This document shows, in pieces, positions 17,850-37,581 of a stretch of 64,000 bases of DNA (its first letter is position 1; each line of letters starts with the position of its first letter). The stretch comes from Paramoeba atlantica (Eukaryota > Protista > Discosea): positions 1-64,000 of the forward strand of contig CDRNVI010000074.1 of NCBI GenBank assembly GCA_977017575.1, written 5' to 3'. The notes under the pieces were generated by a model. That model saw nothing but the letters and a program-made list of their open reading frames with translations. It was not told the DNA's origin and did not search any database. Position numbers and translations under genes: made by a program.

Positions 17850-20800
17850 ATGGCTAGCGCTCGAGTGTATACGTGCATTCGCGTACGACCTCCACTATTG
17901 GCCCCGGATGAGCCGACCATACCACTTGACATTGACGCTACGCACACAAAGTTACGCATTGTAAAGGAAATACCCATGATGTCATCCGCACACAGCACGA
18001 AGTCAGAGAGCAAATACCTCTTCGACCGAATCTTTAACGCTGGCTCTCCTTCTTCTGAAGTATTTCTGCACTCGTGGCCTATGCTTCGAGAGAATCTTTT
18101 ACAAGGCTACCATGGCGTGTTCTGCGTGTATGGGCAAACAGGGAGTGGTAAGACATATACGGTAGACGCGTACCTCGAGGAGCTTCTTCCCACCGTTTTC
18201 GGAGAGATGCAAGACGGACTACTCAGTAGTGCTAAGGTCATCGCCATATCCTACGTACAAATTTACATGGATGGGATTTATGATTTGTTAAACGAAAATC
18301 GCTCCATTGCAAAATCTCGAGCCTCGGACACAACCGCATTTCCGATACCGGAGTCCATGTCGGCTCACAAAGTACACCACTTACTGCTGCAAGCACGAAA
18401 ACACAGAAAATTATCCGAGCACGCCTTAAACCGACGTAGCAGTCGTTCACACACGGTTTTCATTCTCCATGTGGAGCTGCAAACCGAAGAAGGCCAACTA
18501 CTTTATCCAAAATTATACATTGTAGATCTCGCCGGCAGCGAACGTCTCTACCGTACCCTCTCCGCGGGCAACACCTTCGATGAGGGCTGTAATATCAACA
18601 AATCCCTGAGCTGTTTAGCCAAATGTCTGGAGTGTATGGCACAGCGACAAGCGATGGTTCCCTATCGTGAGTCAGCGCTCACTTACTTTCTACGTGACGC
18701 CTTGTCAAATTCCTTATTCGTGCTCTTGTGTTGTGTTTCCCCGGAGGTGCTGGATGAGGACGAGACCCGATGCACGTTACATTTCGCCACAGTAGCTAGG
18801 AAAGTGGTCATACAGCGACACAGCGCAGCAGACCAAGCCCGACGAAGATCTCTGCGACTGCAATATGAGGAAAAACTGGAACAGCAAATCTCAAACCTCA
18901 AAGCGGTACACGAGCATGAGGTCCGGGTCCTGCAGGATCGGGCGCGAACTGTGCAAGCCTCTACAATGGACCACAGAAGGTCCTATGAGGAGTTGCATGA
19001 GAGATATGGGAAGCTGTGGCGACAGCTGGAAGCGACGGAGAGTGAGTTAGAGGCAGCAAAATATACGGTTGATGAGCTCCAAAGCGAGCTATCGGAGAAA
19101 CAGATAGAAGTGCAAGAGGTTACGTTGGAACTTCAATCGTTACGGGAGCGTGGCGAACATTCGCATACTGCACAGCGTGCCCCGAATGACGATCAGTGGT
19201 TCGGTTTACTAAGAGAACGTATGAGCCACGCAATAGACAGTTTACGGGGTGAATTAATCCACACTAACCTTCCCTCGGAGCCTCCGACGTCTGTGGTGTC
19301 AGATCTATCCATCGACACTTCACTTACTTATGTGTCTACAGACTCTGTGTATAGTTTTCCTCCGGAGTATGCCAAAGGAGGAAATGTACATCAAGAAATT
19401 CAGTCTGAGGAACTGAGGCTTGAAACCACTTTTGAAGGTGATAATATGAGATGGAGTCTTCCTTTGGGAGGCGCGGAGCCCTTTAATGTACCAACTGGCA
19501 CAAATTCTATAGAGTCTCCACCTCGAGCTCAGTTAACTGATCAGTACCACACATTCATCAGTATGTCACCCATAACAACACAATTGCGCAGTTGTCTTGA
19601 AGCTCACTACAAGGAAATCATTCTAACATTAGAATATGAACAGGAGAGTCGTAGAAATCTTGAACGTATGGAAGATAAGTGGTTTTCTTCAATTTCCCAG
19701 ACTTTCCGAGAAATACTTGCCAAACGTGAATTGTCTTGCATTTCAGCATCATTCTTAGCCACGGAAGAGAGCCACGAAGCTTCACAGGAAATTGGCTTGT
19801 TGAAAAATATTGGTCACATCCCATCTCTGTCTCTTCTAGAGGAATGCAAGAAAGTAACAGATCATCACAAATCGGAAATCTGCGATCTAAAACAAAGTCT
19901 TGCATACCTGAACTTAGGGTTTCAAGAATCCCAGGAACGTCAACAACTTCAATCGATAATGCACGCTTCAAATTTCGACTTTTTACTGGAGGGGACACAG
20001 CGGCTCCATTCGATCTCTGTAGATGAAGTAAAAAAGGATCGGGACGCGTCACGCAACAATCTTTTACTTGAAATAGCGGAGGTTCGCGATGAGTTGGATA
20101 TTGCAATGAACGCAACTGTTCGATTTCAAGATGAACTTTCTTTATCTACAGAGATGAACGAACTGGTGAGATTACAATTTAGTGAGGAAGAGGCGAGAAA
20201 TATACTGATATCCCAGCAACTAAATGTGGCTCAGACGTATTTTAGTGTGCATAGTGCTGAATTGCAATGGTTCTTGTGTAGCAATCACCTACTCTCCACA
20301 GTGGAACCTAGTAGACGAGCTCTGATCATGATTACCGCGTTTTCTACCTTTACAGAGATAATGCGTGCTCATGCGGCACAACTGACGAGTCAGTACGAAA
20401 TACAACTTCGAGAGACATCCAGTTTCAGAGTAGCTCAAACAGATATGACAAGTGCTTTGAACAACTTTGCCGCCTTGCAGGAGTCTATAGTCGACTTATC
20501 GGGCGAAAGATGGAATCTAGTAAGTGGCACCCTAGAAAAACAATTTGAAGTTGGTTCTTTTAGGCGGCATGAAAAGGAAACCATTCACGAACTTCTCTTA
20601 ACGGAGTCCGGTGAACGTGTTAGTGCCGTGTTTGCTGCCATGCTTGACATAAAGGAAGGAGCATTTTCAAAATTGGATAAAACTATAAAACACGCTGCTA
20701 CGTTAGAAAGATCGATCCAAAAGATACTTGAAGATCATACCTCTTTTCGCAGCATCCGTGAAAATGAAGTAGAAAATCTGAAGGAGCGCTGTAAAAAACG

Positions 20801-21485
20801 TGAAGACTCACTTCAGCAAGAGATACTGGCCTGTCGTGACATGTTGACTACGAAGGAGTTCGAATCCCACGCCATCCAGTCTCAAATGAACTTATGGAAG
20901 GCTCGGTGCGAGACTGTTGCCCGAGTGCTTCACGCAAAAGGAATCGTAGACTTGAACCCAGCCGCAGACACACCTGTCGACATCCTCCGGGGTGGTGGCT
21001 TTGAATCCTTTTTAAAATCCTTAGCCTGTTCCCCCCGTAGATCGAACTCTCGACGGAGCCTGAAACCTTACCTACAGGATGTAACCGAGAGCACTAAACA
21101 TCGACCCAGTACCGACCGCTACATGTCCTCTGCCTCCAGCAGCGTGGGAAGTCGTTCGCATTCTCCCAGTGTACGCTACCAGAGTAGACCATCGAATATT
21201 TCCTCTGCTCCGCGGAATTTGAATACTCGTGCGGGATATAGGGACGACTCCCCTCGTGCTTACAGCCCAACGGGTTCAGAATCGCTTCCCTTATCGATGA
21301 CACATTTGCCACGGAGTAACTCAGTGAGGCGAAGTACTTCAAGACCTGCGTACCACGGAGGGACCCCTCGGAGTTCACCTCGATTACATTACAAGCACTG
21401 TCGATGCTCCGCATGTGCGCTTGTGGGATTTCCTCCGGTCTCGCCGCTGTCACCACATCTGAATACGCGTTCAGAAAGAATATAG
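17850..21485 (+). CDS. Kinesin with N-terminal motor, coiled-coil stalk and Ser/Arg-rich tail
   Basis: P-loop GQTGSGKT, switch I NRRSSRSH, switch II DLAGSE. Confidence 0.95.
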   Translation: MASARVYTCIRVRPPLLAPDEPTIPLDIDATHTKLRIVKEIPMMSSAHSTKSESKYLFDRIFNAGSPSSEVFLHSWPMLRENLLQGYHGVFCVYGQTGSGKTYTVDAYLEELLPTVFGEMQDGLLSSAKVIAISYVQIYMDGIYDLLNENRSIAKSRASDTTAFPIPESMSAHKVHHLLLQARKHRKLSEHALNRRSSRSHTVFILHVELQTEEGQLLYPKLYIVDLAGSERLYRTLSAGNTFDEGCNINKSLSCLAKCLECMAQRQAMVPYRESALTYFLRDALSNSLFVLLCCVSPEVLDEDETRCTLHFATVARKVVIQRHSAADQARRRSLRLQYEEKLEQQISNLKAVHEHEVRVLQDRARTVQASTMDHRRSYEELHERYGKLWRQLEATESELEAAKYTVDELQSELSEKQIEVQEVTLELQSLRERGEHSHTAQRAPNDDQWFGLLRERMSHAIDSLRGELIHTNLPSEPPTSVVSDLSIDTSLTYVSTDSVYSFPPEYAKGGNVHQEIQSEELRLETTFEGDNMRWSLPLGGAEPFNVPTGTNSIESPPRAQLTDQYHTFISMSPITTQLRSCLEAHYKEIILTLEYEQESRRNLERMEDKWFSSISQTFREILAKRELSCISASFLATEESHEASQEIGLLKNIGHIPSLSLLEECKKVTDHHKSEICDLKQSLAYLNLGFQESQERQQLQSIMHASNFDFLLEGTQRLHSISVDEVKKDRDASRNNLLLEIAEVRDELDIAMNATVRFQDELSLSTEMNELVRLQFSEEEARNILISQQLNVAQTYFSVHSAELQWFLCSNHLLSTVEPSRRALIMITAFSTFTEIMRAHAAQLTSQYEIQLRETSSFRVAQTDMTSALNNFAALQESIVDLSGERWNLVSGTLEKQFEVGSFRRHEKETIHELLLTESGERVSAVFAAMLDIKEGAFSKLDKTIKHAATLERSIQKILEDHTSFRSIRENEVENLKERCKKREDSLQQEILACRDMLTTKEFESHAIQSQMNLWKARCETVARVLHAKGIVDLNPAADTPVDILRGGGFESFLKSLACSPRRSNSRRSLKPYLQDVTESTKHRPSTDRYMSSASSSVGSRSHSPSVRYQSRPSNISSAPRNLNTRAGYRDDSPRAYSPTGSESLPLSMTHLPRSNSVRRSTSRPAYHGGTPRSSPRLHYKHCRCSACALVGFPPVSPLSPHLNTRSERI

Positions 21486-22265: not shown

Positions 22266-25200
22266 ATGGATTCCTTTTCTGAGATCGACCACGACCGTTT
22301 ACGGGAAGAGCTTTCTCTTGTTTCTACTTCATTGGGGTCTGATCAAGAAGCGTTTTTTCAAGAAGAAAGCCGAATGTTTACTACTGTGTACCAGGGAGTG
22401 AAGTTATCTTTCCAAGTTCCTGACGAATATCCACACCATACGATCTCAATTCATCTAGACATTGATCCCCATCTTGAGGAATGCTACTTGCGATGCAACG
22501 ATGTGCTTAGCGACATTCTTCCTGGGGAATGCATGCTTTTTGTGATATGCCAAACATTTCGGTTTTCCGTGGACCAACACAAAAGCCAGATTCCCATGCG
22601 GCCGAAATCAACTCAAAGCACAGGAAAGAAAAACCCTTTCGAAAAGCCGTTAAACATAACCGCGTCGAATTCCATACCTTTTGGAACAGAAAGTGCACAA
22701 CTAAGCTCTGGCGCGCCGTTCGCAGATGAAATATTTATGACATCGAAAGAGAAATCAGTCGAAAATTCCGCTACAGTTTCGAAGCCACAAAGTTTGCAAA
22801 ATATTCATCTATCGCGCCCATTTAAGACTCATGGAGGATATCCATTAGTAGAGTCATTGCAAATGTTGACGTGCCCTCAAAACAGATGCCTCAGTAAAAG
22901 TTCGCTTTCATTGTTAAGTTGGAATGTTTTGTGTGATCTCTTTGATGAAAATAATTTGCGTAGGAGCGAAGAGCGACTCCCTTTACAACTTAAGTTTCTG
23001 GCTTTAAGCAACTGTGATATCATTGCGCTTCAGGAAATTACGCCCAAGTTTTGGAAGGCTTTATCGGATTATGAACCTTTGATATCTCAGTACTCTCTGA
23101 CATATTTACCTTCTGACGTTGCTATCGGGCAAGTTATTCTCTCTAGGCTCAAAATTTCGAACGCTCGAGTACTTCGTCTCTCACCCCAAAAGCATGCTGT
23201 ATTCATACTATTGGAATCCCAGAAGAACCGCACGCTTTCAATAGCAAACATTCAGTTAATTAGTGATTTTGCCCGCGAATCCAGCTCAAGACGTGTCGAA
23301 GAGTTAGCTGCAATATGCAAAACCTTTACGGATGGCACTGATCAGATTCTTCTCGGCGATTTTAACTTTGGTGACGCAGATACTGAGACAACGTCGGAGC
23401 CTTTAGCCGCTTTTCTGGACAGCTGGAAGACCCTCCGAGGAAGCGAGGCAGGCGTTACCTTTGACTATGAAAATAACCCACTGTCACATTTGTCATGTGG
23501 ACCACGAAAGGAATCACGCCGTCTGGATCGTATAATGGTGCGTGGTCTACTGATTCCTACGGAAACCCAGATTGTAGCAAGAACTCCGGATGCAAGTGGG
23601 TTATTCCTGAGTAGTCACTATGCTGTACGATCTGTAATACACATGGAAGAATCTTTCCAGCCCTTTGTGCGCCCAGTCCAACTGGATTCAAATACCGCGG
23701 TTGTCATTTTGCCACCCGTGGGAACGTGGAAATCTATTGACAAACTGAGACTTAATGGTGATCCTTATTATCCTCGTTGGATGCCCCATGTAAAGATCTG
23801 CCATCCTTTTATATCTTTACAAGGCGAACAGCTCCCCGTTGTTATGAAAGCTCTTTCATCCATCGCCGCCCGCTGTCCTCCTTTTCGAGCGCGGCTTCAC
23901 AACTTTGACTCCAAGACAAATTTCGGGTGTACCACCGTAGGGTTGAAACTGGAACCCCTGCCCCCCTTTGAGGCTGCGGTCCACAAATTACGTGAGCTTT
24001 TGCTCTGGGCCTACTCCATGTGTACTGTCGACCACAGCCCCGCGCTACTCTCCATTGGTCAATACCCCCCAGAGGAGGCCGAGCGTGTTCGCGCGGAGCT
24101 ATTCGCGAATTGGGTCCCTCTTATCTTTGAGGTCACGCACCTTCATCTGGTGTATCGTGAGAGCAGCCATCAATGCTGTAACATAATCCATTCCGTAGCT
24201 CTTGGCGCATTATCAGAATCCTCTCCTTCCTCGGTCACCGCCTCTCCCCTTGTCACGGTTCCCTCCGTGGACAACTTAGAAGACTTTCCCCCGGAACCGG
24301 AGCTTCCCCCTCCCATGGTCCTGGAAACTCTCCCCGGGACCTCGAAAAAAGCTCCAGAGAGTTATTGGCCGCGTGATGGTCTAGAGAAGTGGATGGCTGA
24401 GAACACCGTGCTGGAACTCGCAAGGCCTCAACCCACGCACGTGTCACAACGAGGGGCGATGTATCATATCCCAAAAAATAAATTAGGTTCGTATCTCCTG
24501 CAGTGGGAGAGTGCCATACGACACGCTGACCAGACACCATTCTGTGTCGAGGAGGTGCGCTCGGAGCTGTTTCGACTCTATGTGGATGTCGATTTTCGTT
24601 CCACGGTGGCACGGAAGGTACATCTGCAGGATACGAAATTTCCTGCGTTGCTGTTAACCCACACAGCGGCGTGTTTCCCCAATGTGGATGTCACGGTCGC
24701 GGTGACGGAGTGTCATGGAAAGTGGGAAGATCGGTCACATGACACAGCTGTGTTTAAGTCTGGGTATCGGTTTTATTTTCAGCATGTTTGGGTTGATACC
24801 AGTGCGTTTGGGGTGTTTCTTGAATCCCTCGCAGCTCTCTGTGACGAGTTGCTTCCGATTCCTCGAAACGCACCAGCGAACACGAAATGGCAAGAAATAG
24901 TGAACACGTATACAGTAGCATGGCCACGGGCCAGGCTTTTAGGAAGCATCAAGAGGCGGAGACATTTGTGGAGAAGATACCGATTATTGACATTTCTGGC
25001 GTCCGACAGCAAGGATTTGAGCGAGTTTTATGAAAAAAGAGCTATTGAGCATTTATCGGGGGTTACCACGGCTCAGTCCTACGTCAGTACTGCAATGGAA
25101 ACTATGAGTCGACTACTCTTTGCTGTTACGGTATCATCCTGGGACATTGACGACGAAACATTGGAAGGAATATCCATTTATCGCAACATGTGGACGGAGA

Positions 25201-25337
25201 GCAAGACTTTTACAATGGAAAAGATGAATCAGGAATACCTTCATCCTCTATTGGAGATGCGATCTCGGAAGCCGAAAGACCGCAAACGCGAGACAAAGGA
25301 TTCATCTGAGAAAATGTCAAAAGATCAAAATAGTTAA
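22266..25337 (+). CDS. Multidomain protein: RWD + endonuclease/exonuclease/phosphatase (EEP) + 2H phosphoesterase-like + AEP primase-like domain
   Basis: RWD FQVPDEYP. EEP SWNV, LQEI, GDFN, RLDRI, SSHY. 2H-like VILPP...RWMPHV and LSIGQ. AEP-like FRLYVDVDF, KSGYRFYF, RLLGSIK. Confidence 0.75.
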   Translation: MDSFSEIDHDRLREELSLVSTSLGSDQEAFFQEESRMFTTVYQGVKLSFQVPDEYPHHTISIHLDIDPHLEECYLRCNDVLSDILPGECMLFVICQTFRFSVDQHKSQIPMRPKSTQSTGKKNPFEKPLNITASNSIPFGTESAQLSSGAPFADEIFMTSKEKSVENSATVSKPQSLQNIHLSRPFKTHGGYPLVESLQMLTCPQNRCLSKSSLSLLSWNVLCDLFDENNLRRSEERLPLQLKFLALSNCDIIALQEITPKFWKALSDYEPLISQYSLTYLPSDVAIGQVILSRLKISNARVLRLSPQKHAVFILLESQKNRTLSIANIQLISDFARESSSRRVEELAAICKTFTDGTDQILLGDFNFGDADTETTSEPLAAFLDSWKTLRGSEAGVTFDYENNPLSHLSCGPRKESRRLDRIMVRGLLIPTETQIVARTPDASGLFLSSHYAVRSVIHMEESFQPFVRPVQLDSNTAVVILPPVGTWKSIDKLRLNGDPYYPRWMPHVKICHPFISLQGEQLPVVMKALSSIAARCPPFRARLHNFDSKTNFGCTTVGLKLEPLPPFEAAVHKLRELLLWAYSMCTVDHSPALLSIGQYPPEEAERVRAELFANWVPLIFEVTHLHLVYRESSHQCCNIIHSVALGALSESSPSSVTASPLVTVPSVDNLEDFPPEPELPPPMVLETLPGTSKKAPESYWPRDGLEKWMAENTVLELARPQPTHVSQRGAMYHIPKNKLGSYLLQWESAIRHADQTPFCVEEVRSELFRLYVDVDFRSTVARKVHLQDTKFPALLLTHTAACFPNVDVTVAVTECHGKWEDRSHDTAVFKSGYRFYFQHVWVDTSAFGVFLESLAALCDELLPIPRNAPANTKWQEIVNTYTVAWPRARLLGSIKRRRHLWRRYRLLTFLASDSKDLSEFYEKRAIEHLSGVTTAQSYVSTAMETMSRLLFAVTVSSWDIDDETLEGISIYRNMWTESKTFTMEKMNQEYLHPLLEMRSRKPKDRKRETKDSSEKMSKDQNS

Positions 25338-25910: not shown

Positions 25911-27101
25911 GTGTGTCTCTTTTTTCAAACTGCTCCACCCGTCTTTTCGAGTTTAAGAAACGGATTTTCCGATGTCCAAGGACTGTGGCATCATAAGCCG
26001 AGCAACTCGGATTCTGCGGAACCTTCAGTGATTGCAAGATTTGGCACAGATGGAATGGTAGAAACCGAGAGGACGATATGCAAAAAATTCAACGAACATA
26101 ACGAGATCAATGTGCTTGCTGGGAAAAAAGTTGCCCTTGAGAACTACATTGAGGGAGCTCAAAATATACTGCGCTATGCCTGGCCTCCACTCTGTTCGCT
26201 GGTAATTGGCGATGAGAATGCCGGTGTGAGTTCAGCTACCATTTCTAGCTCTGATGACACCGTTTACATTCCTCAACAGGGAACCATTTCCTCACTGAAC
26301 GTCGTCACGGCGTTAGCCATCGCGTTGCATTGCCTGCACATTTCACACAACGTATCCCGAAGCCGCTTAATAATAGGGAATACTTCTGCGACGCAAAATT
26401 TCATGTGCGACGACTTTGCTGAAAAACGGCCGGAACGAAACGGAGATTTGCGCCCCGTTCGACCATCTCTTTATCAACGTCCGAATGCAGACGTGCTTAA
26501 ATATGCAAAGAAAAATCGATTAGGAAATTTTTCCATCTATTACGAAAATACTATAGATTTTAGAACTCTCGGAGGAAGCATCCGTAATGCCAACGCCTTT
26601 GGTATCAAAACAGTCTACTACTCTGGCAAACGTAAAATTAATCGACAAGGCGCCGTAGGATCTTATTTCTTCGTTGATTCTGTATTTCTAGACGATGCTA
26701 CTATCATTGAGGATATCCTAAAGAAACATGAAATTTTGGTTTTGCTACCAACTTACACCCCTTCGCAGAATTTTTCATTGTTGGACAATGACGTTAGGAA
26801 GGATGCCTGGGACAAAGCACAATTACCCTGTATATTTCTTGATGATACTCAAACACTTCTCTCGTATTTAGCCAACCGTCGTTCTGAAAAAGATATTCTG
26901 TTGGTGCTTTGCCAAGAAAACCTATATCCCTCAGAGACATTAATTCCTCACGCGCGATTTATTGTGCAAATAGTCAGTGACAAGTACAAAGAACAAATAT
27001 TCGCCAAGGGAAGAGGTTTGCCCGCATGCGTGGCCGGTGCTATTGCGATGTTTCACATTTCCCACGCTCTTCGAGGTTGCTTGGGTGGTATTAATGCGTG
27101 A
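25911..27101 (+). CDS. SpoU/TrmH-like SPOUT RNA methyltransferase with two tandem SPOUT-like domains; start uncertain
   Basis: Domain 1 ends LVIGDENAGVS...VYIPQQGTISSLNVVTA. Domain 2 begins YENTIDFRTLGGSIRNANAFG and has a degenerate knot. Frame is open from 25743, first in-frame ATG at 26055. Confidence 0.75.
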   Translation: MCLFFQTAPPVFSSLRNGFSDVQGLWHHKPSNSDSAEPSVIARFGTDGMVETERTICKKFNEHNEINVLAGKKVALENYIEGAQNILRYAWPPLCSLVIGDENAGVSSATISSSDDTVYIPQQGTISSLNVVTALAIALHCLHISHNVSRSRLIIGNTSATQNFMCDDFAEKRPERNGDLRPVRPSLYQRPNADVLKYAKKNRLGNFSIYYENTIDFRTLGGSIRNANAFGIKTVYYSGKRKINRQGAVGSYFFVDSVFLDDATIIEDILKKHEILVLLPTYTPSQNFSLLDNDVRKDAWDKAQLPCIFLDDTQTLLSYLANRRSEKDILLVLCQENLYPSETLIPHARFIVQIVSDKYKEQIFAKGRGLPACVAGAIAMFHISHALRGCLGGINA

Positions 27102-27229: not shown

Positions 27230-28876
27230 ATGTCTATGGCCCAGCCTGTTGTCGTCCTCAATGCGAACACCCAACGTGAGAGTGGTCGCAAGGCGCAGCT
27301 CAACAATATCCAGGCCGCCCAAGCCGTCAGTGAGCTCATTCGTTCCACTCTGGGTCCCTGTGCGATGCTGAAAATGGTCCTCGACCCCATGGGGGGCATT
27401 ACCCTCACCAACGACGGGAATAGTATTCTTCGTGAAATCGACGTTGTGCATCCCTCCGCGAAGCATATGATTGAACTCAGCCGCGTCCAGGATGATGAGG
27501 TCGGGGATGGCACCACCTCTGTGATTGTGCTCACAGGGGAACTCCTAGGACTTTGTCCCGCACTCCTGGAAGACAGCATGCACCCCCTAACAATTGTCCG
27601 AGGCTTTTATCGCGCTCTACATGATGGGCTTGAGATTCTTCGTCTGCCGGATATGTCGGAGACGATTGATTTGGAAAATGAGACGAAGCTGCAGGAGCTA
27701 ATCCGTACCTGTGTGGGGACGAAGGTAACCTCCAGACAGGATATGATTATGTCGAAACTCGCCGTGACTTCTGTCCGATGTATCCAGAAGGGAGAGAAAA
27801 ATTCCGCATCGCTGGAAGTCGATTTAAAGCGCTATGTGAAGATCGAGAAAATCCCAGGAGGTTCATTAGAAGACAGTGAGGTTCTTGTCGGAGTGATGTT
27901 CAACAAGGATGTGGTGCACCCGAAAATGAGTCGTCGCATAGTGAACCCACGCATCCTGCTGCTGGACTGTCCTCTGGAGTACAAGAAGCCTGAGACAAGT
28001 TTCAACGTTGAAATAACCAAAGACACGGATTTTGAACTGCTAATCCGACAGGAAGAAGACTTTATCCGCGGATTGTGCTCTAAACTGGCGGCATATGAAC
28101 CATCCATTGTCATCACAGAAAAGGGAGTGTCAGATTTGGCAGCTCATTTCCTTGCCCGGGCTGGCGTTTCCGTGATCCGTCGACTACGAAAGACAGATAA
28201 CAACCGCCTGGCACGTGCCTGCGGGGCTACAATTGTAAGCTCCGTAGAGGATCTCACTGACGAGGCCGTCGGCACCCAGTGCGGTCTCTTCGAGGTGCGA
28301 AAAATCGGTGATGAGTACTTCTCCTACTTTGAGAAATGTGAAAACCCGAAGGCGTGCAGTATTGTGCTACGAGGCGCATCCAAGGATGTGCTTAACGAGA
28401 CGGAGCGAAATCTACGCGATGCGCTTTGTGTAGCACGTAATGTATTCGTGACTCCCCATGTTGTGTTTGGTGCGGGTGCATTGGAGTTAGAGCTCTCCTC
28501 ACGGCTGATGGAAAAGTCGAAATCCATTGCGGGGGAAGAACAACTTGCCTACCAAGCCGTTGCGAAAGCGCTGGAAGTGATTCCGCGAACGCTAATTCAG
28601 AACTGTGGTGCAAACACCATACGAACACTCACTGAAGTTCGCGCCAAGCATGCTACTCCAGGTAGGGGCGCCACTTGGGGAGTAGACGGTGTTACCGGAG
28701 AGGTTTCGGATGTACGAGAGTTGAAAGTGATTGAGCCCTTGGTCGTGAAACTTCAGTGCTTGAAGACAGCGGTTGAAGCGGCCTGTATTATGCTACGCAT
28801 TGATGATGTCGTTTCTGGCATAAAGGGAAAGGAGAGCAAATCCTCAGGTCCCTCGGCGCCTGTTGACGAAGCGTAG
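27230..28876 (+). CDS. CCT3: T-complex protein 1 subunit gamma
   Basis: LGPCAMLKMVLDPMGG, TNDGNSILREIDV, GDGTTSV, YVKIEKIPGG, LLDCPLEYKKPE. Confidence 0.96.
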   Translation: MSMAQPVVVLNANTQRESGRKAQLNNIQAAQAVSELIRSTLGPCAMLKMVLDPMGGITLTNDGNSILREIDVVHPSAKHMIELSRVQDDEVGDGTTSVIVLTGELLGLCPALLEDSMHPLTIVRGFYRALHDGLEILRLPDMSETIDLENETKLQELIRTCVGTKVTSRQDMIMSKLAVTSVRCIQKGEKNSASLEVDLKRYVKIEKIPGGSLEDSEVLVGVMFNKDVVHPKMSRRIVNPRILLLDCPLEYKKPETSFNVEITKDTDFELLIRQEEDFIRGLCSKLAAYEPSIVITEKGVSDLAAHFLARAGVSVIRRLRKTDNNRLARACGATIVSSVEDLTDEAVGTQCGLFEVRKIGDEYFSYFEKCENPKACSIVLRGASKDVLNETERNLRDALCVARNVFVTPHVVFGAGALELELSSRLMEKSKSIAGEEQLAYQAVAKALEVIPRTLIQNCGANTIRTLTEVRAKHATPGRGATWGVDGVTGEVSDVRELKVIEPLVVKLQCLKTAVEAACIMLRIDDVVSGIKGKESKSSGPSAPVDEA

Positions 28877-29161: not shown

Positions 29162-31060
29162 ATGAACCTCTTCAACCGCGTTCTCAACATGGGCCCCGAG
29201 CGCTCTCGTGAACGCCTCCTCGCCACCCTCGCCCAAATCCGAGTTCTCCTCGCGGACCTCCCGGAACCCTCCCGTGCCGCGGATCTCGAAATGTGCGACA
29301 TGATCAGCCGTGTCGCGGACACCGAGCACCACGACCTCGGCACCATGCTCTCCGCCCACGAGGCCGCCCGCACCCTACTGCGCTCCGTGCGACGCAAAGC
29401 GCTGTGGCCCACCCACCCCCTGCCGCTCCCCAACAACGTCATCTGCCACGAGCTCATGTACTACCACCACCCGCGGTACGGCCTGATTGTGCTTCGCTTC
29501 TTCAACCCGCTGCCGGTCCCCAACGCGGATCTCATCTGTGACCAGTGCGACCACAAGCTCGTGCTGGGGTACCAGTGCGTGGATGACGCCGGGGAGCGCG
29601 ACGCGACGAGCTTCGATGTCGGCTTCAGTGGGTTCGACCTCTGCCTCGGGTGTGCCACGACGCACTGGCGACGACACTGGCGGCACTTTCTGAGCTGGGT
29701 CGGAGACGACCCCGCGATTCTGTTGGAACTCTCGAAAGAGGAGATGGAGGAAATCGTTCGTGCAGACGGGGAGGAGAGGTGGGTGGTGAGACGCCCGTCG
29801 AGGGCAGGGAGGGAGGGGGAGAGGGGGAGAAAACCCGTAGAGGAAGCACAGGTAGAGGGGACAGAACGTTCGTCGGATCCTGTAGCGGAGTTCGTGGCCT
29901 CAGCAGAGGATGTGTACTACCCGTGTGGGGATATTGGGCATAACATTCGACTGTGTAGCAATAAGTTGGGTACGTCATGGGTGGAGGATGTGATGGAGTT
30001 TGAGATCTTTCCCGTGGGGAAGAAAATTATTGTTGTACCCGACTTTCTGTTTCATCATTTAATAGACCATTGTCGGGATCGGGCAGCGCTAAATGAAAAG
30101 GTACAGACACAGCGTCTGGAAAAAGAAATCGAAATGGAGGAGAGAACTAAAAAGAAACTTGAGTTAAGCCCCTCTAAAGGTACAGAAGAAGAGCGCATCC
30201 GTGGAGCAAACAAGCGCGAGGAACCCCAATGCGAAGAGCCTACGAGCGACGCTTCCGCGCCGCAAGGTGACTCCGAGGATTGGGAAACAGAGGAATCCTC
30301 CAGTTCGGAAGATACAATTGTGGTCACCATGGAGGATGACGCACCGTCGAATAACCAGTCTGAAGGAAGCAGCATGTCTTCCGACGAAACCGGACCAATG
30401 AGATTGGAATCGCATAGGACGAGATCGAGTTCTCGCACGGAGAACACTGCATCTGATCAAGGGTTTTCTGTGATAGGGCAGAACAGCATTATTCCCCTTC
30501 CCGACCCTCGTATGGCTTGGGATGTGGTGTATTCTCTCTATCACGTTGACTATGCAGAATCGCCCACATCGGTTGAGGAATGTTGTTTGTGCACCGAGCC
30601 ACTGAGCGATGGAGCGGGTGGCAAACTAAGCGCTGTCGTCACGCCTTGTAAACATTACTTTCACGAGGGTTGTTTGCAAAAAGTCCGTCGTTCGGAACTT
30701 ACGTCTACACATCAGCTGTCTGATGAGTTTCGCTGTCCTCTGTGTCGTTCAGTTGTGCACATTGAAGAGATCCAGGGCGTCTACGCGCAGAGAGCCCGGG
30801 TTGCATGGAAAAACAATTGTGAGAGTCTTATACGGGTTAACGCGAGTGAGTTTCTGACCGAGGAAAGAACATATTGCGCACAGTTGAATCAGATATCTAC
30901 GACTGATGAAACCGATACCAAAGAAAATCGAAACGGAAAAATGTTAAAAGAGATTCCAACACCTTTATGTTATTATGTTATGTTGGTAAATGATTATCGT
31001 GCACCTGAAACGTCGTGTACTTTCGTTCTGTGCGTGCATCGTTGTACCGGTTCTGGTTGA
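29162..31060 (+). CDS. RING-H2 protein with a ZZ-like zinc finger (putative E3 ligase)
   Basis: ZZ-like CDQC...YQC...FDLCLGC and RING-H2 CCLC...PCKHYFHEGC...CPLC. Confidence 0.8.
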   Translation: MNLFNRVLNMGPERSRERLLATLAQIRVLLADLPEPSRAADLEMCDMISRVADTEHHDLGTMLSAHEAARTLLRSVRRKALWPTHPLPLPNNVICHELMYYHHPRYGLIVLRFFNPLPVPNADLICDQCDHKLVLGYQCVDDAGERDATSFDVGFSGFDLCLGCATTHWRRHWRHFLSWVGDDPAILLELSKEEMEEIVRADGEERWVVRRPSRAGREGERGRKPVEEAQVEGTERSSDPVAEFVASAEDVYYPCGDIGHNIRLCSNKLGTSWVEDVMEFEIFPVGKKIIVVPDFLFHHLIDHCRDRAALNEKVQTQRLEKEIEMEERTKKKLELSPSKGTEEERIRGANKREEPQCEEPTSDASAPQGDSEDWETEESSSSEDTIVVTMEDDAPSNNQSEGSSMSSDETGPMRLESHRTRSSSRTENTASDQGFSVIGQNSIIPLPDPRMAWDVVYSLYHVDYAESPTSVEECCLCTEPLSDGAGGKLSAVVTPCKHYFHEGCLQKVRRSELTSTHQLSDEFRCPLCRSVVHIEEIQGVYAQRARVAWKNNCESLIRVNASEFLTEERTYCAQLNQISTTDETDTKENRNGKMLKEIPTPLCYYVMLVNDYRAPETSCTFVLCVHRCTGSG

Positions 31061-32348
31061 CTCTTTGATTTGCGCTCGGTTAGTGGAAAGCATGTGTATA
31101 CTATGCTAACTGGTCATGTGACGGTATGTTGTTCAGTTTTACAAGATACATGAGCATTTAATCACGTACCAGTAACGACACAATTTTCGGAGTTCACGAC
31201 TACAATTTTATGGTGTGTTAGAAACGTTTATCTACACTCCCTTGCGGAAAAAGTTCCTCCCTTGCGAAAAAAGAGATCTTTGTTTCCACCTGTTGTTGTT
31301 GATGCAGTACCACCTTGCTCTCCCAGGGTGACGTTTTCCAAGTTTTCGGCCGAATTACCCATGCGAGAACGACCTTTTCCCAATCCTGCCGTATGATCGC
31401 ACTACTTGACATCATGATGGCAATTATACAAAGCGGTTCAGATATACGAATGTAGGCTGACTATCATTCCTGATAATATGTACAGTGTACAAGGCTTCTG
31501 TAGTGTGCTCAACCATTTTCTCAAATATTTAAGCAGGTAGTTTAATCAGTAATTAAAGCTCTGGTAATTCAAGCTGTGGTAGTTACAAGATGATGTGTAC
31601 TCACTACCAGTATAATGAGAACAAGAAAATAATGTTTTTATTAATATTGAACTACAAGGTTCTGATTATAATTTATGGTATGTAGTACAGAAGGCTTCTT
31701 CATTAGATTTGAAGACAAAGGCGCTCTGGAAATCATCAAGCATGCATTACTGAAAGTTGATGTGAAACCAAAGGTTCTGGACGATAGGCAATGTGTTTTT
31801 ATTCCAGTTTCGGTCGCTGAAACAGTGCTGGACATTATAGCAGCCGAGCAATTCGAGGTGTGAAAACAGAACTCAAATATGAACTGTACGAATATCATCC
31901 TTGGTATTGGAATATTATGGCATTGGATCCTTGGTATTGGAATATCACCACTGGTATTGGACGAGTGGAATCTGCGTTTCCCGAATTCTAGTGCATAGAA
32001 TAATTCGTAAGTTTTTCTTTCGTAAGAAGAAGAAAGATTTCTTTCGAAGAAGAAGAAAGATCGCTGAAAATATGTGGGATAAAAAATATTTTTTAATAAA
32101 ATCCATTCATTCCAATAGCAAATGTGCATACTCTGTCCTTCTTTTATGATTTCGGGATCCTCGTGACGCTTACGCTTGTTCACCGTTTGCAAAGACGAAA
32201 CCTCAAGCACCACCTTCAGAATCGTAAAGTTAACAAAATGGAAGAAATTTGTTTATTAAAGCAAAATTCGCATTTTTCAAAAATTTCAATTTTTTTAATG
32301 TTTTAAGTAGAAAAAACAACTTTCAGCTTCTAGATTCCAGCATAAATA

Positions 32349-33069
32349 CTGTCACCCCCCCTTTATACTTCAGGGGGGTGAACCCGCCCTTTATACTTTC
32401 GTTTTCATCCCGACTAAAAATCAGCACCCCCCCATTTATACTTCCGGTCAATTTTTTTTAAAACCATTTTCCACATGTTTTTGTATTAAAAGTTAGAGAT
32501 GTGTGTAGAGGTATTCCTAGATATAAATTTGTTCCCATGCCATTACTCACAGTCAGTTAAGCATTATACCCCTCTTCATCGCGTTGGGACTCCCAACGAA
32601 ATAATAGTTTCAAGCGCGGAGCCTTCGACGTTACCAGTGTCCATCGGTTCACCCCAGGGAGGAAAGAACCCAACAATGTAGGAGATGTTGAATGTGTGTC
32701 ATTCGAGTAGCAGTGCTCAACAAATCAGCGAGATGTACGGCGTCTGATCTCGAACCATCCGCTCCGTCCCGAAGAATGGTGTCGGTTTTTTCCAGAAAAA
32801 AATAAATCTATCGTGGTCGGAAGCGCGATGGGGTTATTATGCCCTGCATGTTTGGAGATTAGATGATTGATTTTTATCTAGAATAATAGAAAACCAGCGC
32901 CGCGAAGCGGCGCATTTTTTTTTTTTTCCCCCTTTTCAAAACATTTGTTTCGCGGATTTTTCAAAAAATCAGACCCCCCCTTTATACTTCCGAAAGTGAG
33001 ACCCCCCCCCTTTCTACTTCCAAAAGTACCGAAACCGGCGGAAGTATAAAGTGGGGGGGGGTATGACAG
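32349..33069. mobile_element. TA-flanked MITE, about 720 bp
   Basis: TIR CTGTCA(TA)CCCCCCC..TTTATACTTC. TA at 32347-32348 and 33070-33071. Subterminal CCCCCTTTATACTTC repeats. Confidence 0.7.
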
Positions 33070-33083
33070 TACGTACACAAGAC

Positions 33084-33914
33084 TTACAAATGAATACAAC
33101 GACAATGATCTTGCAGATTCTCTAAGATGCGCAGCATCACATCGCCGCCATTGCATCGTAGACTGCCGTTGCATTTTTCAGCATTGGCTTGCACACGATC
33201 TGCCCTTCTCACTTTTCTTCCAAACACATTTCCTTTTCGATTCAGGCGCTTTTTCGCCACAGAATTCGCACACTCTACGGTGTTCTTGTGAACACCCTCT
33301 GCCGTGACCCATTAACGGAGGTGATTTACACTGTTCCACTTATAACGTTCACCAAGACGGATATTGTGCCGCGCCCCATCGGTCCAAATTCTAGTACTCC
33401 CCCCGCACGCCAGATCTTCAATGCGAGGAATCAAAGTGCTCGCCTTGCGATCAGGTACTACTTCCATGAATATTTGAGATAATTTGTACGTTTGAGTAGT
33501 CACGGCAATGGTCTGCAACTTCTGTACCATCATCTCGCACACGTTTTGCACCGTAGGAACCTCGGTGACGTTTCCGCACAGAAAAAAACGTCTTGTCACA
33601 TAGCATGGAATCAACACTGCCTCGATTCCTGATACGCCGGCGAACGTGAGCTGTGACCATCATGCCATCCATCCATTGACTTAAGGATACGATGCTCTGC
33701 TTACTAAGCCCTATCTCCGCTGCCGAATCAGCGTGTCGTCCACCACGAGCGTACAAGATTATGTACTTTATAGTTTGCTATGTGCTCCGTTGTGCCCTTC
33801 CTGGTATGAGTGGTCCCAAGGTGGCGTACATTCCCTTGCACCTTTTAGTACACCTCCACTTCTCGCCAGTGATGTACATAGTGTAGGGCACCTTGTGCGC
33901 TGCCTTGTAACATG
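33084..33914 (-). pseudogene. Merlin/IS1595-family DDE transposase remnant
   Basis: Across frameshifts: WRC..RC zinc ribbon, CDKTFF..RK..RG, EVVPDRKASTLIP.I, IWTDG, VNH...GVHKNTVE. Internal TAA after VNHLR. Confidence 0.8.
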
Positions 33915-34180
33915 CAGTCCGCGTCATACTGACCCCCCCTCCCAGGAAATCTTAGTTTTCCTATTCGATTTTTCTCATCTATGCAGCATTCGAGAGATAT
34001 CGTTCCCATAGGAAAGTAGTGCTTTTGCCACTGTTTTTACCACTGTTTTTACCTTTTAGCCAGACGCTTCGAAAAAGTGGAAAATTGCACGTTTTTTTAC
34101 CAAAATTTTGAATAGATTTAAAAATTGCTTATTTTTTCATTACTTTTTTTCCGGAGGGGGGATCAATATGACGCGGACTG
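33915..34180. mobile_element. MITE, about 265 bp
   Basis: TIR CAGTCCGCGTCATA(C/T)TGA(T)CCCCCCTCC. TA on the right flank. Confidence 0.65.
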
Positions 34181-34890
34181 TACTTTTGCGGCCAAAGACA
34201 GATTTTGGGCTTAATTAAGTTTGGGCGTAATTAAGTTTAGACCGGTATTTCGGGATTGCGACTCCGTTGACAATCTGTGACCCTCAAGTTAGAAATCTGA
34301 TTTGGTGTGAATTTATGTCGCCGCAGAACTGTACTAATTGTTTCAGCGGATGTAGGCTTGAGTTTTACCACCATATCCTGAATAACATATCCTGATAACA
34401 CACTCCCAACTTTCATTGGGAATTCCTTTGATATGCATCAAATTTTCGATGACCATTATAAATAGGAATTTTAGCTAAAGTTATACACTTGATTCAAAAT
34501 TTATGTTGCGATTTGTATAAGCAATGGAAAGAGATCCTAAAATTGTGGGGCTATCAGAGTTCAACGCTGGATGGGGAGCAGCAAGAGATATTGCAGACGC
34601 CATTGAAATACTTAAAAAATTGTGTGATGCGACTGTACATAAACCATTAGACGAGAATGATTTAGCCACCTACGAGAAAAATTGGAATGCGGCGCTTCAT
34701 GTCATACATGACAATCTTTGCTGTCGGAGGGATCAGTTGCGAAGAATATCGAATTCCTCATTTTAAACCAATGAAATATTTTAACGTGGCACTACGCTAG
34801 GCTACCGCAGCGTTTTTTGCATGCTTCGCTATGCAATTTCCTGTATTAGCTGATTGTTGGTGGATCTTGAAAAGCTCACAATAATGAAAG

Positions 34891-36995
34891 TACCCCCCCC
34901 TTAGATATCCTAGTACGCTACTTATCCTCTTTTGTGATGAAACCTCTGGGTCACGAGAGGATAAGTAGCATACTAGTTTACAGAGAATCTTTTCAGAATC
35001 TTTTCTTAAAAAATCAGTAGTAAAATTTTAAGAGTTGTGCACAGTTATATTCAGAATAAAATTCTCGGTGTTCTGAGAACAATGAGAATCATGATTCGTA
35101 GATAGGAAGCAAACGTTTGTCAGTGAGTACGGCGTTCATTTTCGACGAAAGATACAGTGCTCGCAAAAATTAGTAAAACTTTTATTGTAAAATAATAAAA
35201 AAGTTTTACTAATTAAAAATTTACTAATTTTTGCACTGCCCCCAAAAAGTTTGCCAACTTGGTAAAATTAATTTTTGCAGATACGGTATTTCTGTCGTTT
35301 GAGTACGTTGTGCAAAATGTAATTCTGAGTAAATATCATCTGCAAAATGGTAGTGCCAGGGAAGACCGCGATGAGGTCCCGACCATGCTTCCCCATGCTG
35401 AGTTTGTCAGGCTTTAGTGAAGCATGTTTTTCAGAAAAGGTGTCTTTACTTTGCGAAAAAAATGGAGAGTATGTAGACGGTACCTATAGATCGCTGTAGG
35501 TCGCTGGCAGTTTCTGGCGGGAACTCGCGGACTCTGACAGTTTCTGGCGGATTCTGACAGTTTCTGTAGGTATTTTTTTAGAGTGGAGAGCTAGAGGGGG
35601 TGTACTAGACTAAATAAGGGAACCGCGGTGGTTATGCACAGGTACCGCGGTGTATGTATATTGTGTACAATATATAAATATATTGTGACTGGTGATGAGA
35701 CTTCGGTGTGCCGGGAGCCCACAAATGAAATAACCTAAGAAATCCGTGGCACAAAGAGGGTGAAGATTAAGACATGAAGGTTAAGACATGTATCAAAGAA
35801 AAGGCCATGGTAACATCTTGGTTTTGGACAATGGACACTATGCAGTTGTCCACTGCCATCTGGTGCCATGCGCTGCCATCCAGTGCCATCCAAAACGGAG
35901 ATATGAGCGAGGCCCGAAGACCTTTTTTTTGATTTTTTTGAGGACCGAAGAACTTTCCATTTCCGCCGGATGTTGTAGGACAAGTGATGGCCTTGATATG
36001 AAAAAGCGGCTAATGTCGGATTCAATTGTACTCATTTTTCAAAAACACGACTTTTCCTTTCCTTTTGCAAAATAAGATATTTTCTCGGTCTCTTCTTGTG
36101 CGTTCTCTGTCATGTACATGTGCGGGCCTGAGTTGAATTTTAAAGTGAAAGCATGATGGAGACACACCAAAAACTTTTGAAGATTTTTTGCGTTGTGACC
36201 GGAGAGAAATGTCTTCACGATCACGAGGGTGGGAAAGTTCTTGACTCTGTTTCCAGTATTTGTCGGAGGCGATGTAAGCACGTAAGTTTCAGAAAAAGAT
36301 TGTCTCGATTACTTCCTTACTTTTATTCAGATGTGCGCAAACCGTCCCACAAATTTTAGTTTTGGTTACTTGTAGTACACAAGTTTTTTAGTACACAAGT
36401 ACATAATTTTTTTTTAGACACAAAAATTAGTCATCCAGTGCCATCCGCTGCCATCCAGTGCCATCCAAATCTTCATAGTGTCCAATGTCTGTGCTTTTTC
36501 CCGGTTCCTCCCCAGAACAACGTACTTGGGAACATCGTTTGTTTCCACTGCACCTGTTGTGGAGCGCTCAGTCTTGTCAAAGTCGAGTTGCACGGGAAAC
36601 GAAAGCAGCATCAGATCTGTACTGTTGCACTTCAACCGTTACAGGATCAGGTTGGATAACAGGAGCTTCCTTTTTTCAATGAATGATAGAGGATTTATTT
36701 TGACACGAGCAAGTATCCACCCGGCAAGACTTTATTCGTGCTAGACTTGTACGCAATTCCTTTTTCTTGATTTTGATGCCTTACTTGGACAGCGTGCAAC
36801 TCCGTCCAAAAGAACACATCGGCGAATACTTTCGGCGCGGTTGTATCATGCTAAAAACAACTTCTGGAGCAAATGTCGCGCGAACTTCTTCTAGTACGCT
36901 ACTTATCCTAGTATGCTACTTATCCTAGTACGTTACTTATCCTCAAACTGCCCATTTCGGAGACGGAATGCGGGATATCTAAGGGGGGGTAACGG
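34891..36995 (+). mobile_element. pogo/Tc5-like (DDE_1) element, copy A, degraded, with nested insertions
   Basis: TIR (CCGT)TACCCCCCCTTAGATATCC and 17-bp subterminal repeats TAGTACGCTACTTATCC. Remnants IVTGDETS, GSGWITG and TLFVLDLYA. Confidence 0.8.
35833..36483. mobile_element. PIF/Harbinger-like MITE nested in pogo copy A
   Basis: TIR GGACACTATG, 3-bp AAT duplication (35830-35832, 36484-36486), internal GTGCCATCC repeats. It splits a region that is contiguous in copy B. Confidence 0.6.
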
Positions 36996-37057
36996 TATTG
37001 TAATTTCATCCATAAGCATCTTCAGAAGTTTTTGACTTTTCTACATTTTGATTACAA

Positions 37058-37526: not shown

Positions 37527-37581
37527 ATTCTTTCTATAATATTGGGGGGATAACTACGTATTGGGGGAATTATTGGGAGTA

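What the first reader, a model, noticed from the sequence alone, without database searches (positions are those of the whole stretch)
22266..25337. RWD-EEP-2H-AEP fusion: possible novel nucleic-acid end-repair protein
Seen: four modules in one ORF. Established: EEP plus 2H end-healing modules occur in eukaryotic RNA-repair proteins, usually fused to a poly(A)-polymerase-type nucleotidyltransferase. Here the C-terminus instead looks like a PrimPol/NCLDV-type AEP (LYVDVDF, KSGYRFYF, RLLGSIK). Several catalytic positions deviate: EEP SDH to SSH, 2H HxT to HVK with the second His absent, AEP motif II His to Arg, motif III Asp to Asn. Inference: a heal-and-extend enzyme analogous to LigD, or a partly inactive scaffold linked to ubiquitin or ribosome signalling through RWD.
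Basis: partly seen in the sequence, partly recalled or inferred. Interest (0 to 1): 0.75.

Follow-up and report, generated by a model that had tools for sequence, protein, structure and literature searches.

The report
Degenerate RWD-EEP-2H-PrimPol RNA-end repair protein

Summary
Window 22266-25337 (+) is one intact 1023-aa ORF with four modules: an RWD-fold N-terminus, a TDP2/ANGEL-like EEP domain, a LigT-like 2H domain, and an NCLDV-type AEP of Pfam family PPL4 (PF18188).

The novelty claim does not hold. (RWD)-MJ1316-EEP-2H-PPL4 recurs in euglenids, diplonemids, prokinetoplastids and the trypanosomatid Angomonas, whose database name already lists MJ1316, 2H and Prim-pol 4. Sister proteins in other organisms, including actinobacteria, carry a poly(A)-polymerase-type transferase where the Prim-Pol sits here.

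- Motif II Arg is the family norm, not a deviation.
- Motif III Asn is shared by five of the six prokinetoplastid sequences.
- SSH in EEP and loss of the second 2H histidine are shared only with Perkinsela and one metagenomic relative (clade support 100).
- The window protein also lacks the MJ1316 cyclic-phosphate-end reader, and I found no MJ1316 match in its genome.

The altered domains remain as conserved as the AEP domain, so the gene is not decaying. Most likely it is a reduced RNA 3'-end processing factor: EEP possibly active, 2H a non-catalytic binder, Prim-Pol altered, RWD a docking module. I found no experimental study of any family member. Verdict: new member of a known kind; interest about 0.3.

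The parts
22266..25337 (+). Complete ORF, 1023 aa plus stop
   Evidence: A 99.6% identical copy lies on an ENA metagenome contig, and a 99.1% identical copy lies on contig C24 of the same genome.
22287..22583 (+). RWD-fold N-terminal domain (about residues 8-106), with an invariant Pro in the 'EYP' motif at residues 54-56
   Evidence: Pfam RWD is sub-threshold in three orthologues. AF2 model pLDDT 84.8. Foldseek and VIA top hits are RWD domains, Z up to 10.1.
22584..22880 (+). Poorly conserved linker (residues 107-205). Relatives carry the MJ1316 domain here; it is absent in the window protein.
   Evidence: Alignment A1. No Pfam hit. No MJ1316 match found in the genome. Identity to relatives is 12-23%.
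22899..23639 (+). EEP (endonuclease/exonuclease/phosphatase) domain, TDP2-like (residues 212-458). N220, E257, D365, N367, D421 and H451 are retained.
   Evidence: Pfam. PDB sequence hits to TDP2: E 4e-5 with the protein alone, 2.5e-16 with the family profile, and ANGEL2 at 2e-4.
23610..23618 (+). EEP terminal motif S-S-H (residues 449-451) in place of S-D-H
   Evidence: Motif table: SDH in 15 of the 18 family sequences with a match. SSH occurs only in the window, P0002 and Perkinsela.
23712..24164 (+). 2H phosphoesterase domain (LigT/YjcG-like, residues 483-633)
   Evidence: Pfam 2_5_RNA_ligase2, 55.6 bits. The family profile hits B. subtilis YjcG 2d4g at E 6e-13.
23787..23795 (+). 2H motif 1: H508-V-K (the consensus outside the prokinetoplastids is H-x-N; classical 2H enzymes have H-x-T/S)
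24045..24053 (+). 2H motif 2 position: L594-L-S, where relatives have H-[LMC]-T. The catalytic His is lost.
24348..25010 (+). PPL4-family Prim-Pol (AEP) catalytic domain (residues 695-915)
   Evidence: Pfam PPL4 94.4 bits and AEP_C962R 46.3 bits. AF2 pLDDT 91.2. Foldseek to ASFV C962R AEP E 3.7e-8 and to MPXV E5.
24585..24593 (+). AEP motif I: D774-V-D776 (metal ligands). Invariant in the family.
   Evidence: C962R D97/D99 are the equivalents (PMC10516667).
24756..24779 (+). AEP motif II: KSGYRFYF, with R835 at the usual His position
   Evidence: KSG[FY]R in 18 of 19 matched relatives. The position is more than 90% conserved in A5. The spacing to motif I (59 residues) matches C962R D99-H157 (58).
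24903..24905 (+). AEP motif III: N880 in place of the metal-ligand Asp
   Evidence: Asn in five of six prokinetoplastid sequences; Asp in all other family members. The spacing (104 residues) matches C962R D99-D200 (101).
25011..25265 (+). Helical C-terminal extension of the Prim-Pol module (residues 916-1000), with a conserved 'LLFA.T...W' element
   Evidence: AF2 model. Alignments A1 and A5.

Best explanation
The ORF is the prokinetoplastid orthologue of a multidomain protein found across Euglenozoa. Its full form is RWD, MJ1316, TDP2/ANGEL-like EEP, LigT-like 2H and PPL4 Prim-Pol.

Inferred mechanism for canonical members, from domain logic:
1. MJ1316 reads an RNA end carrying a 2',3'-cyclic phosphate.
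2. 2H opens the cyclic phosphate.
3. EEP removes the remaining phosphate.
4. The Prim-Pol adds nucleotides to the cleaned 3'-OH. It occupies the place that a poly(A)-polymerase-type transferase holds in sister proteins.
5. RWD docks the enzyme on a partner, possibly one associated with the ribosome.

The window copy belongs to a derived subclade with Perkinsela and one metagenomic relative. It has lost MJ1316, lost the second catalytic His of 2H, changed the EEP motif SDH to SSH, and carries Asn at the third AEP metal ligand. It is still under purifying selection.

My committed reading is a reduced RNA 3'-end processing factor. EEP keeps six of its seven catalytic residues and may still clean ends, as ANGEL2 does directly. 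2H is a non-catalytic end-binding module. Prim-Pol activity is weakened or changed in metal use.

Shown here: domain identities, folds, residue states, phylogeny and conservation. Inferred: RNA as the substrate, the order of reactions, and the role of RWD.
For: - Domains.
- Folds: RWD; AEP.
- Same architecture in Papus, PhF-6, Perkinsela, Ploeotia, Entosiphon, Angomonas and Diplonema.
- MJ1316-EEP-2H-PAP sister proteins show that the nucleotidyltransferase module was swapped.
- MJ1316 is described as a recogniser of RNA 2',3'-cyclic ends that is fused to RNA-repair domains in eukaryotes (PMC6514570).
- The family's EEP is closest to TDP2 and also hits the cyclic phosphatase ANGEL2.
- Motif table.
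- The clade (window, P0002, Perkinsela) has 100% SH-aLRT support.
- The EEP and 2H domains are as conserved as the AEP domain within that clade: 54/48%, 45/42% and 52/37% identity to P0002/Perkinsela.
- The ORF is intact in two 99% identical copies, with 14 synonymous and 8 non-synonymous differences.
- Synteny is conserved (kinesin, this gene, SpoU, CCT) with a relative that is 47% identical.
Against: - No biochemical data exist for any family member in the library I searched.
- Motif III Asp is a direct B-site metal ligand in C962R, so Asn may abolish polymerase activity.
- The 2H domain lacks one of its two essential histidines.
- The RNA assignment rests on associated domains that this particular protein has lost.
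- The role of RWD is pure inference.
- The EEP domain's closest solved relative, TDP2, acts on DNA 5'-tyrosyl adducts.
Confidence: 0.6

Rival explanations
1. Pure pseudoenzyme or scaffold. All three catalytic modules of the window protein are inactive, and it works only by binding, for example as an RNA-end sensor or adaptor tethered through RWD.
For: Key residues are lost together in all three enzymatic domains: SSH in EEP, no second His in 2H, and Asn at AEP motif III. Perkinsela has additionally lost the first 2H His. MJ1316 is also lost. The domains nevertheless stay conserved, as expected for binding modules.
Against: EEP retains N220, E257, D365, N367, D421 and H451. The AEP DxD motif and the family-specific invariant residues (THxSQxGxxYH, KSG, RxRL) are intact. 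Asn is maintained in five prokinetoplastid lineages rather than varying freely, which suggests a still-functional site.
Confidence: 0.25
2. DNA end repair or damage tolerance. A TDP2-like EEP would clean blocked DNA ends, and the Prim-Pol would fill or reprime DNA, as PrimPol/PPL enzymes do.
For: The EEP domain's best solved relative is TDP2. The AEP domain's best structural relatives are the DNA primase-polymerases ASFV C962R and MPXV E5. T. brucei PPL1/PPL2 are DNA translesion polymerases (PMC3898837).
Against: The family architecture includes MJ1316 (a cyclic-phosphate RNA end reader) and 2H. The Prim-Pol alternates with a poly(A)-polymerase-type transferase. There is no ligase, no UL52-type zinc finger and no helicase. 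PPL1/PPL2 have a different architecture.
Confidence: 0.1
3. The gene is decaying and no longer does anything.
For: It has accumulated losses of catalytic residues and of the MJ1316 domain.
Against: The 1023-codon frame is intact in two copies of the genome and in a 99.6% identical metagenomic copy. Orthologues are intact in Perkinsela and P0002. The domains are 42-54% identical across that clade, against 20-23% for the linker. The synonymous excess between copies is modest.
Confidence: 0.03

Closest known systems
Pfam PF18188 (PPL4, 'Prim-pol 4') proteins of Euglenozoa, e.g. Angomonas deanei CAD2220916.1 and Perkinsela KNH09658.1
   Same: Same EEP-2H-PPL4 order. The protein sits inside the family tree and shares the family-specific motifs FRxYxDxD, KSG[FY]R and RxRLxG[TS]xK.
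   Different: The window protein lacks MJ1316 and has an RWD N-terminus (also seen in Entosiphon and other prokinetoplastids, but not in Angomonas). It has SSH in place of SDH, no second 2H His, and Asn at AEP motif III.
MJ1316-EEP-2H-poly(A)-polymerase-type proteins, labelled 'poly(A) polymerase' or 'RNA repair domain-containing protein' in eukaryotic sources and in the actinobacterium Nonomuraea
   Same: The EEP and 2H modules are homologous (hundreds of hits at E 1e-36 to 1e-58 over profile positions about 23-465), and the 'reader, healers, extender' layout is the same.
   Different: The C-terminal extender is a Pol-beta-fold PAP there and an AEP-fold Prim-Pol here.
ASFV C962R and other NCLDV-type primase-polymerases (AEP superfamily)
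   Same: Closest solved fold (Foldseek E 3.7e-8). Pfam AEP_C962R hit. Motif I DxD and the motif spacings match D97/D99/H157/D200.
   Different: No D5-type helicase and no zinc finger. Motif II is Arg and motif III is Asn. No sequence-level match to any PDB chain.
TDP2 and ANGEL2 (EEP enzymes)
   Same: The EEP domain aligns to TDP2 over its full length with the catalytic N, E, D, N and H in register. ANGEL2 also hits the family profile; from my own knowledge it is a 2',3'-cyclic phosphatase.
   Different: The Asp of the terminal SDH motif is Ser here. The substrate is untested.
   Same: One polypeptide that combines end-healing modules with a nucleotidyl-transfer module. LigD uses an AEP polymerase; Trl1 uses a 2H cyclic phosphodiesterase.
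   Different: There is no ligase domain here. The LigD phosphoesterase is unrelated to EEP and 2H. Trl1 has a kinase and a ligase and no polymerase. This is functional resemblance only, not membership.
T. brucei PPL1/PPL2 (PrimPol-like proteins)
   Same: Kinetoplastid AEP-superfamily enzymes of the NCLDV/herpesvirus clade.
   Different: PPL1/PPL2 have an N-terminal AEP plus a UL52-type zinc finger and act on DNA. They have no EEP, 2H or RWD, and belong to a different Pfam family.

Membership tests
PPL4 Prim-Pol (PF18188), AEP superfamily | Match to the family HMM above the curated cut-off | tested here: met
   94.4 bits against a cut-off of 25, residues 702-856
PPL4 Prim-Pol (PF18188), AEP superfamily | AEP fold | tested here: met
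   AF2 pLDDT 91.2. Foldseek to ASFV C962R AEP: E 3.7e-8, probability 1.00, TM (target-normalised) 0.60
PPL4 Prim-Pol (PF18188), AEP superfamily | Motif I DxD metal ligands | tested here: met
   D774 and D776, invariant in 25 sequences
PPL4 Prim-Pol (PF18188), AEP superfamily | Motif II His (generic AEP feature) | tested here: not met
   R835. Arg is the PPL4 family consensus (18 of 19 matched relatives), so this does not argue against PPL4 membership.
PPL4 Prim-Pol (PF18188), AEP superfamily | Motif III Asp metal ligand | tested here: not met
   N880. Asp is present in all non-prokinetoplastid members and in P0004. The equivalent D200 binds the B-site Mn in C962R.
PPL4 Prim-Pol (PF18188), AEP superfamily | Nucleotidyl-transfer activity | not testable with these tools
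   Needs biochemistry
2H phosphoesterase superfamily | Match to a 2H HMM above the cut-off | tested here: met
   2_5_RNA_ligase2: 55.6 bits against 27
2H phosphoesterase superfamily | Two H-x-T/S catalytic motifs | tested here: not met
   Motif 1 is H508-V-K. The motif 2 position is L594-L-S, with no His. The fold is a member; the catalytic definition fails.
EEP (Exo_endo_phos) superfamily | Match to the HMM above the cut-off | tested here: met
   39.9 bits against 24.5. TDP2 hits in the PDB.
EEP (Exo_endo_phos) superfamily | Catalytic N, E, D, N, D and the terminal D-H | tested here: inconclusive
   N220, E257, D365, N367, D421 and H451 are present. The Asp of the SDH motif is Ser450. The effect on activity is unknown.
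RWD domain (UBC-like fold) | Match to Pfam RWD above the cut-off | tested here: not met
   16.8 bits against 22.8 (E 0.008). Orthologues score 19.9 and 22.4 bits.
RWD domain (UBC-like fold) | alpha-beta4-alpha2 fold closest to solved RWD domains | tested here: met
   AF2 pLDDT 84.8. VIA Z 9.1-10.1 to the RWDs of Knl1, GCN2, SEA complex, Listerin and RWDD1/2; most E2 enzymes score about Z 8 or lower, with Ubc9 at 8.9. Top Foldseek hits are RNF25, Listerin and GCN2 RWDs.
MJ1316-EEP-2H-nucleotidyltransferase RNA-repair architecture | MJ1316 cyclic-end recognition domain | tested here: not met
   No hit in the linker and no match found in the genome. It is present in P0003, P0005, P0007-9, P0011, P0013 and P0016-17.
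MJ1316-EEP-2H-nucleotidyltransferase RNA-repair architecture | Orthology with full-architecture members | tested here: met
   Nested in the prokinetoplastid clade of the family tree (support 100 and 99). Synteny is shared with P0002.

The most novel reading that the evidence does not exclude
The RWD domain tethers this protein to a ribosome-associated partner, in the way the GCN2, Listerin and RWDD1 RWDs are used. The family would then be a translation-coupled RNA 3'-end repair or tailing system in which an AEP-fold Prim-Pol acts on RNA. In the Perkinsela-like subclade, the dead 2H domain would have been repurposed as the end reader that replaces MJ1316, and the D-D-N Prim-Pol would still be active with altered metal use.
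Probability: 0.12. Interest if true: 0.7.

Novelty: new member of a known kind. Interest (0 to 1): 0.3.

Why it matters
No PPL4 Prim-Pol has been assayed in any paper I could find, so the family is still an untested prediction of an AEP-fold polymerase that works on RNA ends in eukaryotes. This window adds two things. It shows an N-terminal RWD module on the prokinetoplastid and Entosiphon versions. It also defines a natural set of variants: full-catalytic versions, versions with Asn at motif III, and versions with dead 2H, SSH and no MJ1316. Those variants could guide mutational tests of which activities the family really needs. The finding is not a new kind of system.

Tried and rejected
- **T. 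brucei PPL1/PPL2.** I considered that the protein might be one of these and rejected it: they have a different architecture (N-terminal AEP plus UL52 zinc finger) and are DNA enzymes.
- **Source paper.** I tried to read the likely source of PF18188 (Burroughs and Aravind 2016, NAR 44:8525) and Iyer et al. 2005. Neither is held. What I say about their content is from memory and is marked as such.
- **Literature on family members.** Searches for PF18188, PPL4 and MJ1316 together with kinetoplastids found no experimental work.
- **ESM Atlas.** No usable hit.
- **NCBIfam.** Only one weak 2H hit.
- **AEP region against PDB sequences.** No match even at E 10; only fold comparison found relatives.
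- **Paralogue in the genome.** I looked for an intact paralogue that could explain relaxed constraint. The only other PPL4 locus is a 99.1% identical copy on contig C24, either a haplotig or a recent duplicate.
- **MJ1316 remnant.** I looked in the window linker and in the P0002 linker and found no Pfam hit. P0002 aligns with the MJ1316 region of P0003, but only as a vestige.
- **dN/dS across orthologues.** Not attempted, because at 47% protein identity synonymous sites are saturated.
- **Earlier notes of this scan.** None concern this gene.
Full report
**1. What is there**

Window 22266-25337 (+) is a single uninterrupted ORF of 1023 codons. It lies in a run of long same-strand ORFs: a kinesin at 17850-21485, this gene, a SpoU-type methylase at about 25911-27101, and a CCT chaperonin subunit at 27230-28876. 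The layout, together with earlier scan notes of spliced-leader sequences in this genome, fits a kinetoplastid-type eukaryote. The assembly is 45.7 Mb in 248 contigs.

**2. Domains**

Pfam places four families above their curated cut-offs:
- Exo_endo_phos, residues 217-435
- 2_5_RNA_ligase2, residues 483-633
- PPL4 'Prim-pol 4', residues 702-856, E 8.6e-27
- AEP_C962R, residues 724-902

The N-terminus gives only a sub-threshold RWD hit (E 0.008). The same family is hit independently in the 47%-identical orthologue P0002 (E 8.5e-4) and over its full length in the Entosiphon orthologue P0008 (E 1.5e-4). An AF2 model of residues 1-106 (pLDDT 84.8) has the alpha-beta4-alpha2 topology. Its best structural neighbours are RWD domains:
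- Foldseek: RNF25, Listerin and GCN2.
- VIA-align: Z 10.1-9.1 for Knl1, GCN2, SEA complex, Listerin and RWDD1/2, with most E2 enzymes at about Z 8 or lower and Ubc9 at 8.9.

I accept 'RWD fold'. Sequence-level membership stays just below threshold.

That test fails to refute. The AF2 model of residues 675-1023 has pLDDT 91.2. Its top Foldseek hits are the ASFV C962R Prim/Pol domain (E 3.7e-8, probability 1.00) and the MPXV E5 primase.

**3. Catalytic positions**

Comparison with 19 family members changes what they mean.

| Position | Window | Family | Meaning |
|---|---|---|---|
| AEP motif II | KSGYR (R835) | Arg in 18 of 19 matched relatives; only P0002 has His | A PPL4 trait, not a lesion |
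| AEP motif III | N880 | Asn in five of six prokinetoplastid sequences; Asp everywhere else | A clade trait |
| AEP motif I | D774, D776 | Invariant | Intact |
| EEP terminal motif | SSH | SSH only in the window, P0002 and Perkinsela; SDH in the other 15 matched | Shared derived change |
| 2H motif 2 | L-L-S | H-[LMC]-T in 15 of 18 matched; lost only in the window, P0002 and Perkinsela | Shared derived loss |
| 2H motif 1 | H-V-K | H-x-N outside the prokinetoplastids | Already atypical |

- In C962R, the Asp equivalent to N880 (D200) binds the B-site metal together with D97 and D99, and H157 contacts the nucleotide (PMC10516667). The spacings match: D776 to R835 is 59 residues against 58, and D776 to N880 is 104 against 101.
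- The three proteins with SSH and no motif-2 His form a clade with 100% SH-aLRT support inside the prokinetoplastid group, so each change probably happened once.
- Perkinsela has also lost the motif-1 His of 2H.
- EEP otherwise keeps N220, E257, D365, N367, D421 and H451, in register with TDP2.

**4. Relatives and architecture**

The word-index search found only four proteins. Because the novelty claim rests on the absence of relatives, I ran the exhaustive HMMER search with an alignment from EEP to the C-terminus. It returned 3420 hits.

The full EEP-2H-PPL4 architecture occurs in these groups:
- Prokinetoplastids: Papus ankaliazontas, PhF-6, and Perkinsela KNH09658.1, which is mislabelled 'polynucleotide adenyltransferase'.
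- Euglenids: Ploeotia and Entosiphon.
- A diplonemid (Diplonema japonicum), whose long form has an extra Walker-A-containing insert between EEP and 2H.
- The trypanosomatid Angomonas deanei. Its UniRef name already reads 'MJ1316 RNA cyclic group end recognition domain/2'-5' RNA ligase superfamily/Prim-pol 4'.

Other patterns:
- Most of these proteins carry an MJ1316 domain ahead of EEP. Entosiphon has RWD plus MJ1316.
- Short MJ1316-PPL4 proteins occur in a cluster that includes a Percolomonas sequence.
- Many of the remaining hits cover only EEP-2H. The three I scanned are MJ1316-EEP-2H-poly(A)-polymerase proteins, and the same architecture occurs in the actinobacterium Nonomuraea.
- No Trypanosoma or Leishmania protein appeared in either search. 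The architecture is therefore catalogued but patchy.

The window protein has no MJ1316: none in its linker, and no match found in its genome.

**5. Is it alive?**

- The frame is intact in the window, in a 99.1% identical copy on contig C24, and in a 99.6% identical metagenomic contig. Differences between the copies are 14 synonymous to 8 non-synonymous, and 6 to 6.
- Within the degenerate clade, the EEP and 2H domains are as conserved as the AEP domain. Identity to P0002 and Perkinsela is 54/48%, 45/42% and 52/37% respectively, against 23/20% for the linker.
- Gene order is shared with P0002.

This is a maintained gene, not a wreck.

**6. How it most likely works**

The family-level logic is inferred from domain functions. 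MJ1316 is described as a reader of 2',3'-cyclic ends fused to RNA-repair domains (PMC6514570). My recollection, not checked here, is that Burroughs and Aravind 2016 defined 'RNA-acting prim-pol' families in kinetoplastids. The proposed order is: read a cyclic-phosphate RNA end, open it with 2H, dephosphorylate with EEP, and extend the 3'-OH with the Prim-Pol, which substitutes for the PAP-type transferase of sister proteins.

For this copy:
- 2H cannot run the classical two-histidine mechanism.
- EEP is nearly intact and could clean ends alone. From my own knowledge, ANGEL2 removes 2',3'-cyclic phosphates directly, and ANGEL2 also hits the family profile.
- The Prim-Pol has a D-D-N site whose activity is uncertain.
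- RWD is a protein-docking fold. A ribosome link is attractive because the GCN2, Listerin and RWDD1 RWDs work on or near ribosomes, but I have not tested it.

Rival readings are a pure binding scaffold (0.25), a DNA-end repair enzyme in the LigD/TDP2/PrimPol sense (0.10), and a decaying gene (0.03).

**7. Comparison and verdict**

By HMM, fold, motifs and phylogeny the protein is a member of the PPL4 family. It fails the catalytic definition of 2H and one generic AEP ligand, and it lacks the family's usual MJ1316 reader. It resembles LigD or Trl1 only in having end-healing and transferase modules in one chain; there is no ligase.

Verdict: new member of a known, computationally defined and experimentally untouched family. 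Interest is about 0.3.

Noticed in passing
window 10001-12000 (inside ORF 9533-12457, +): A 2-kb stretch has GC 0.655 and GC skew -0.65, far from the window average of about 0.45 GC. It is a strongly C-rich coding or repeat segment, and long antisense ORFs overlap it.
   Followed up: no
window 31060-39752 and 42133-49097: Two long stretches have no ORF of 200 aa or more on either strand and lower GC (about 0.40), in an otherwise densely coding same-strand array. They may be repeat or retroelement regions, or divergent or very short genes.
   Followed up: no
G000:C24:339954-343418 (L003): A second copy of this gene is 99.1% identical at the DNA level, with an intact frame. It is either a haplotig or a recent segmental duplicate, which suggests the assembly holds both haplotypes for at least this region.
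   Followed up: partly
P0016-P0019, P0027, P0079 (P0017 is Diplonema japonicum; the others have no named source): These long (884-1632 aa) forms carry an extra Walker-A-containing insert (for example '...RG.Q.SGK[ST]TL...') between EEP and 2H. That would add a kinase-like healing module, as in Trl1. Pfam gave no hit for it at E <= 0.001.
   Followed up: partly
P0158, P0159 (Nonomuraea, actinobacteria): Two bacterial proteins share the MJ1316-EEP-2H layout of the eukaryotic sister proteins, and P0159 also carries the PAP domain. This points to lateral transfer of the whole cassette between bacteria and eukaryotes.
   Followed up: no
P0006 (Perkinsela KNH09658.1): The public annotation 'polynucleotide adenyltransferase' is probably carried over from the PAP-containing sister family. 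The protein has a PPL4 Prim-Pol, not a PAP domain.
   Followed up: yes
window 25911-27101 (+): The neighbouring SpoU/SPOUT methylase ORF is listed with a GTG start. In the 99.6% identical metagenomic contig the called gene is shorter (357 aa).
   Followed up: no
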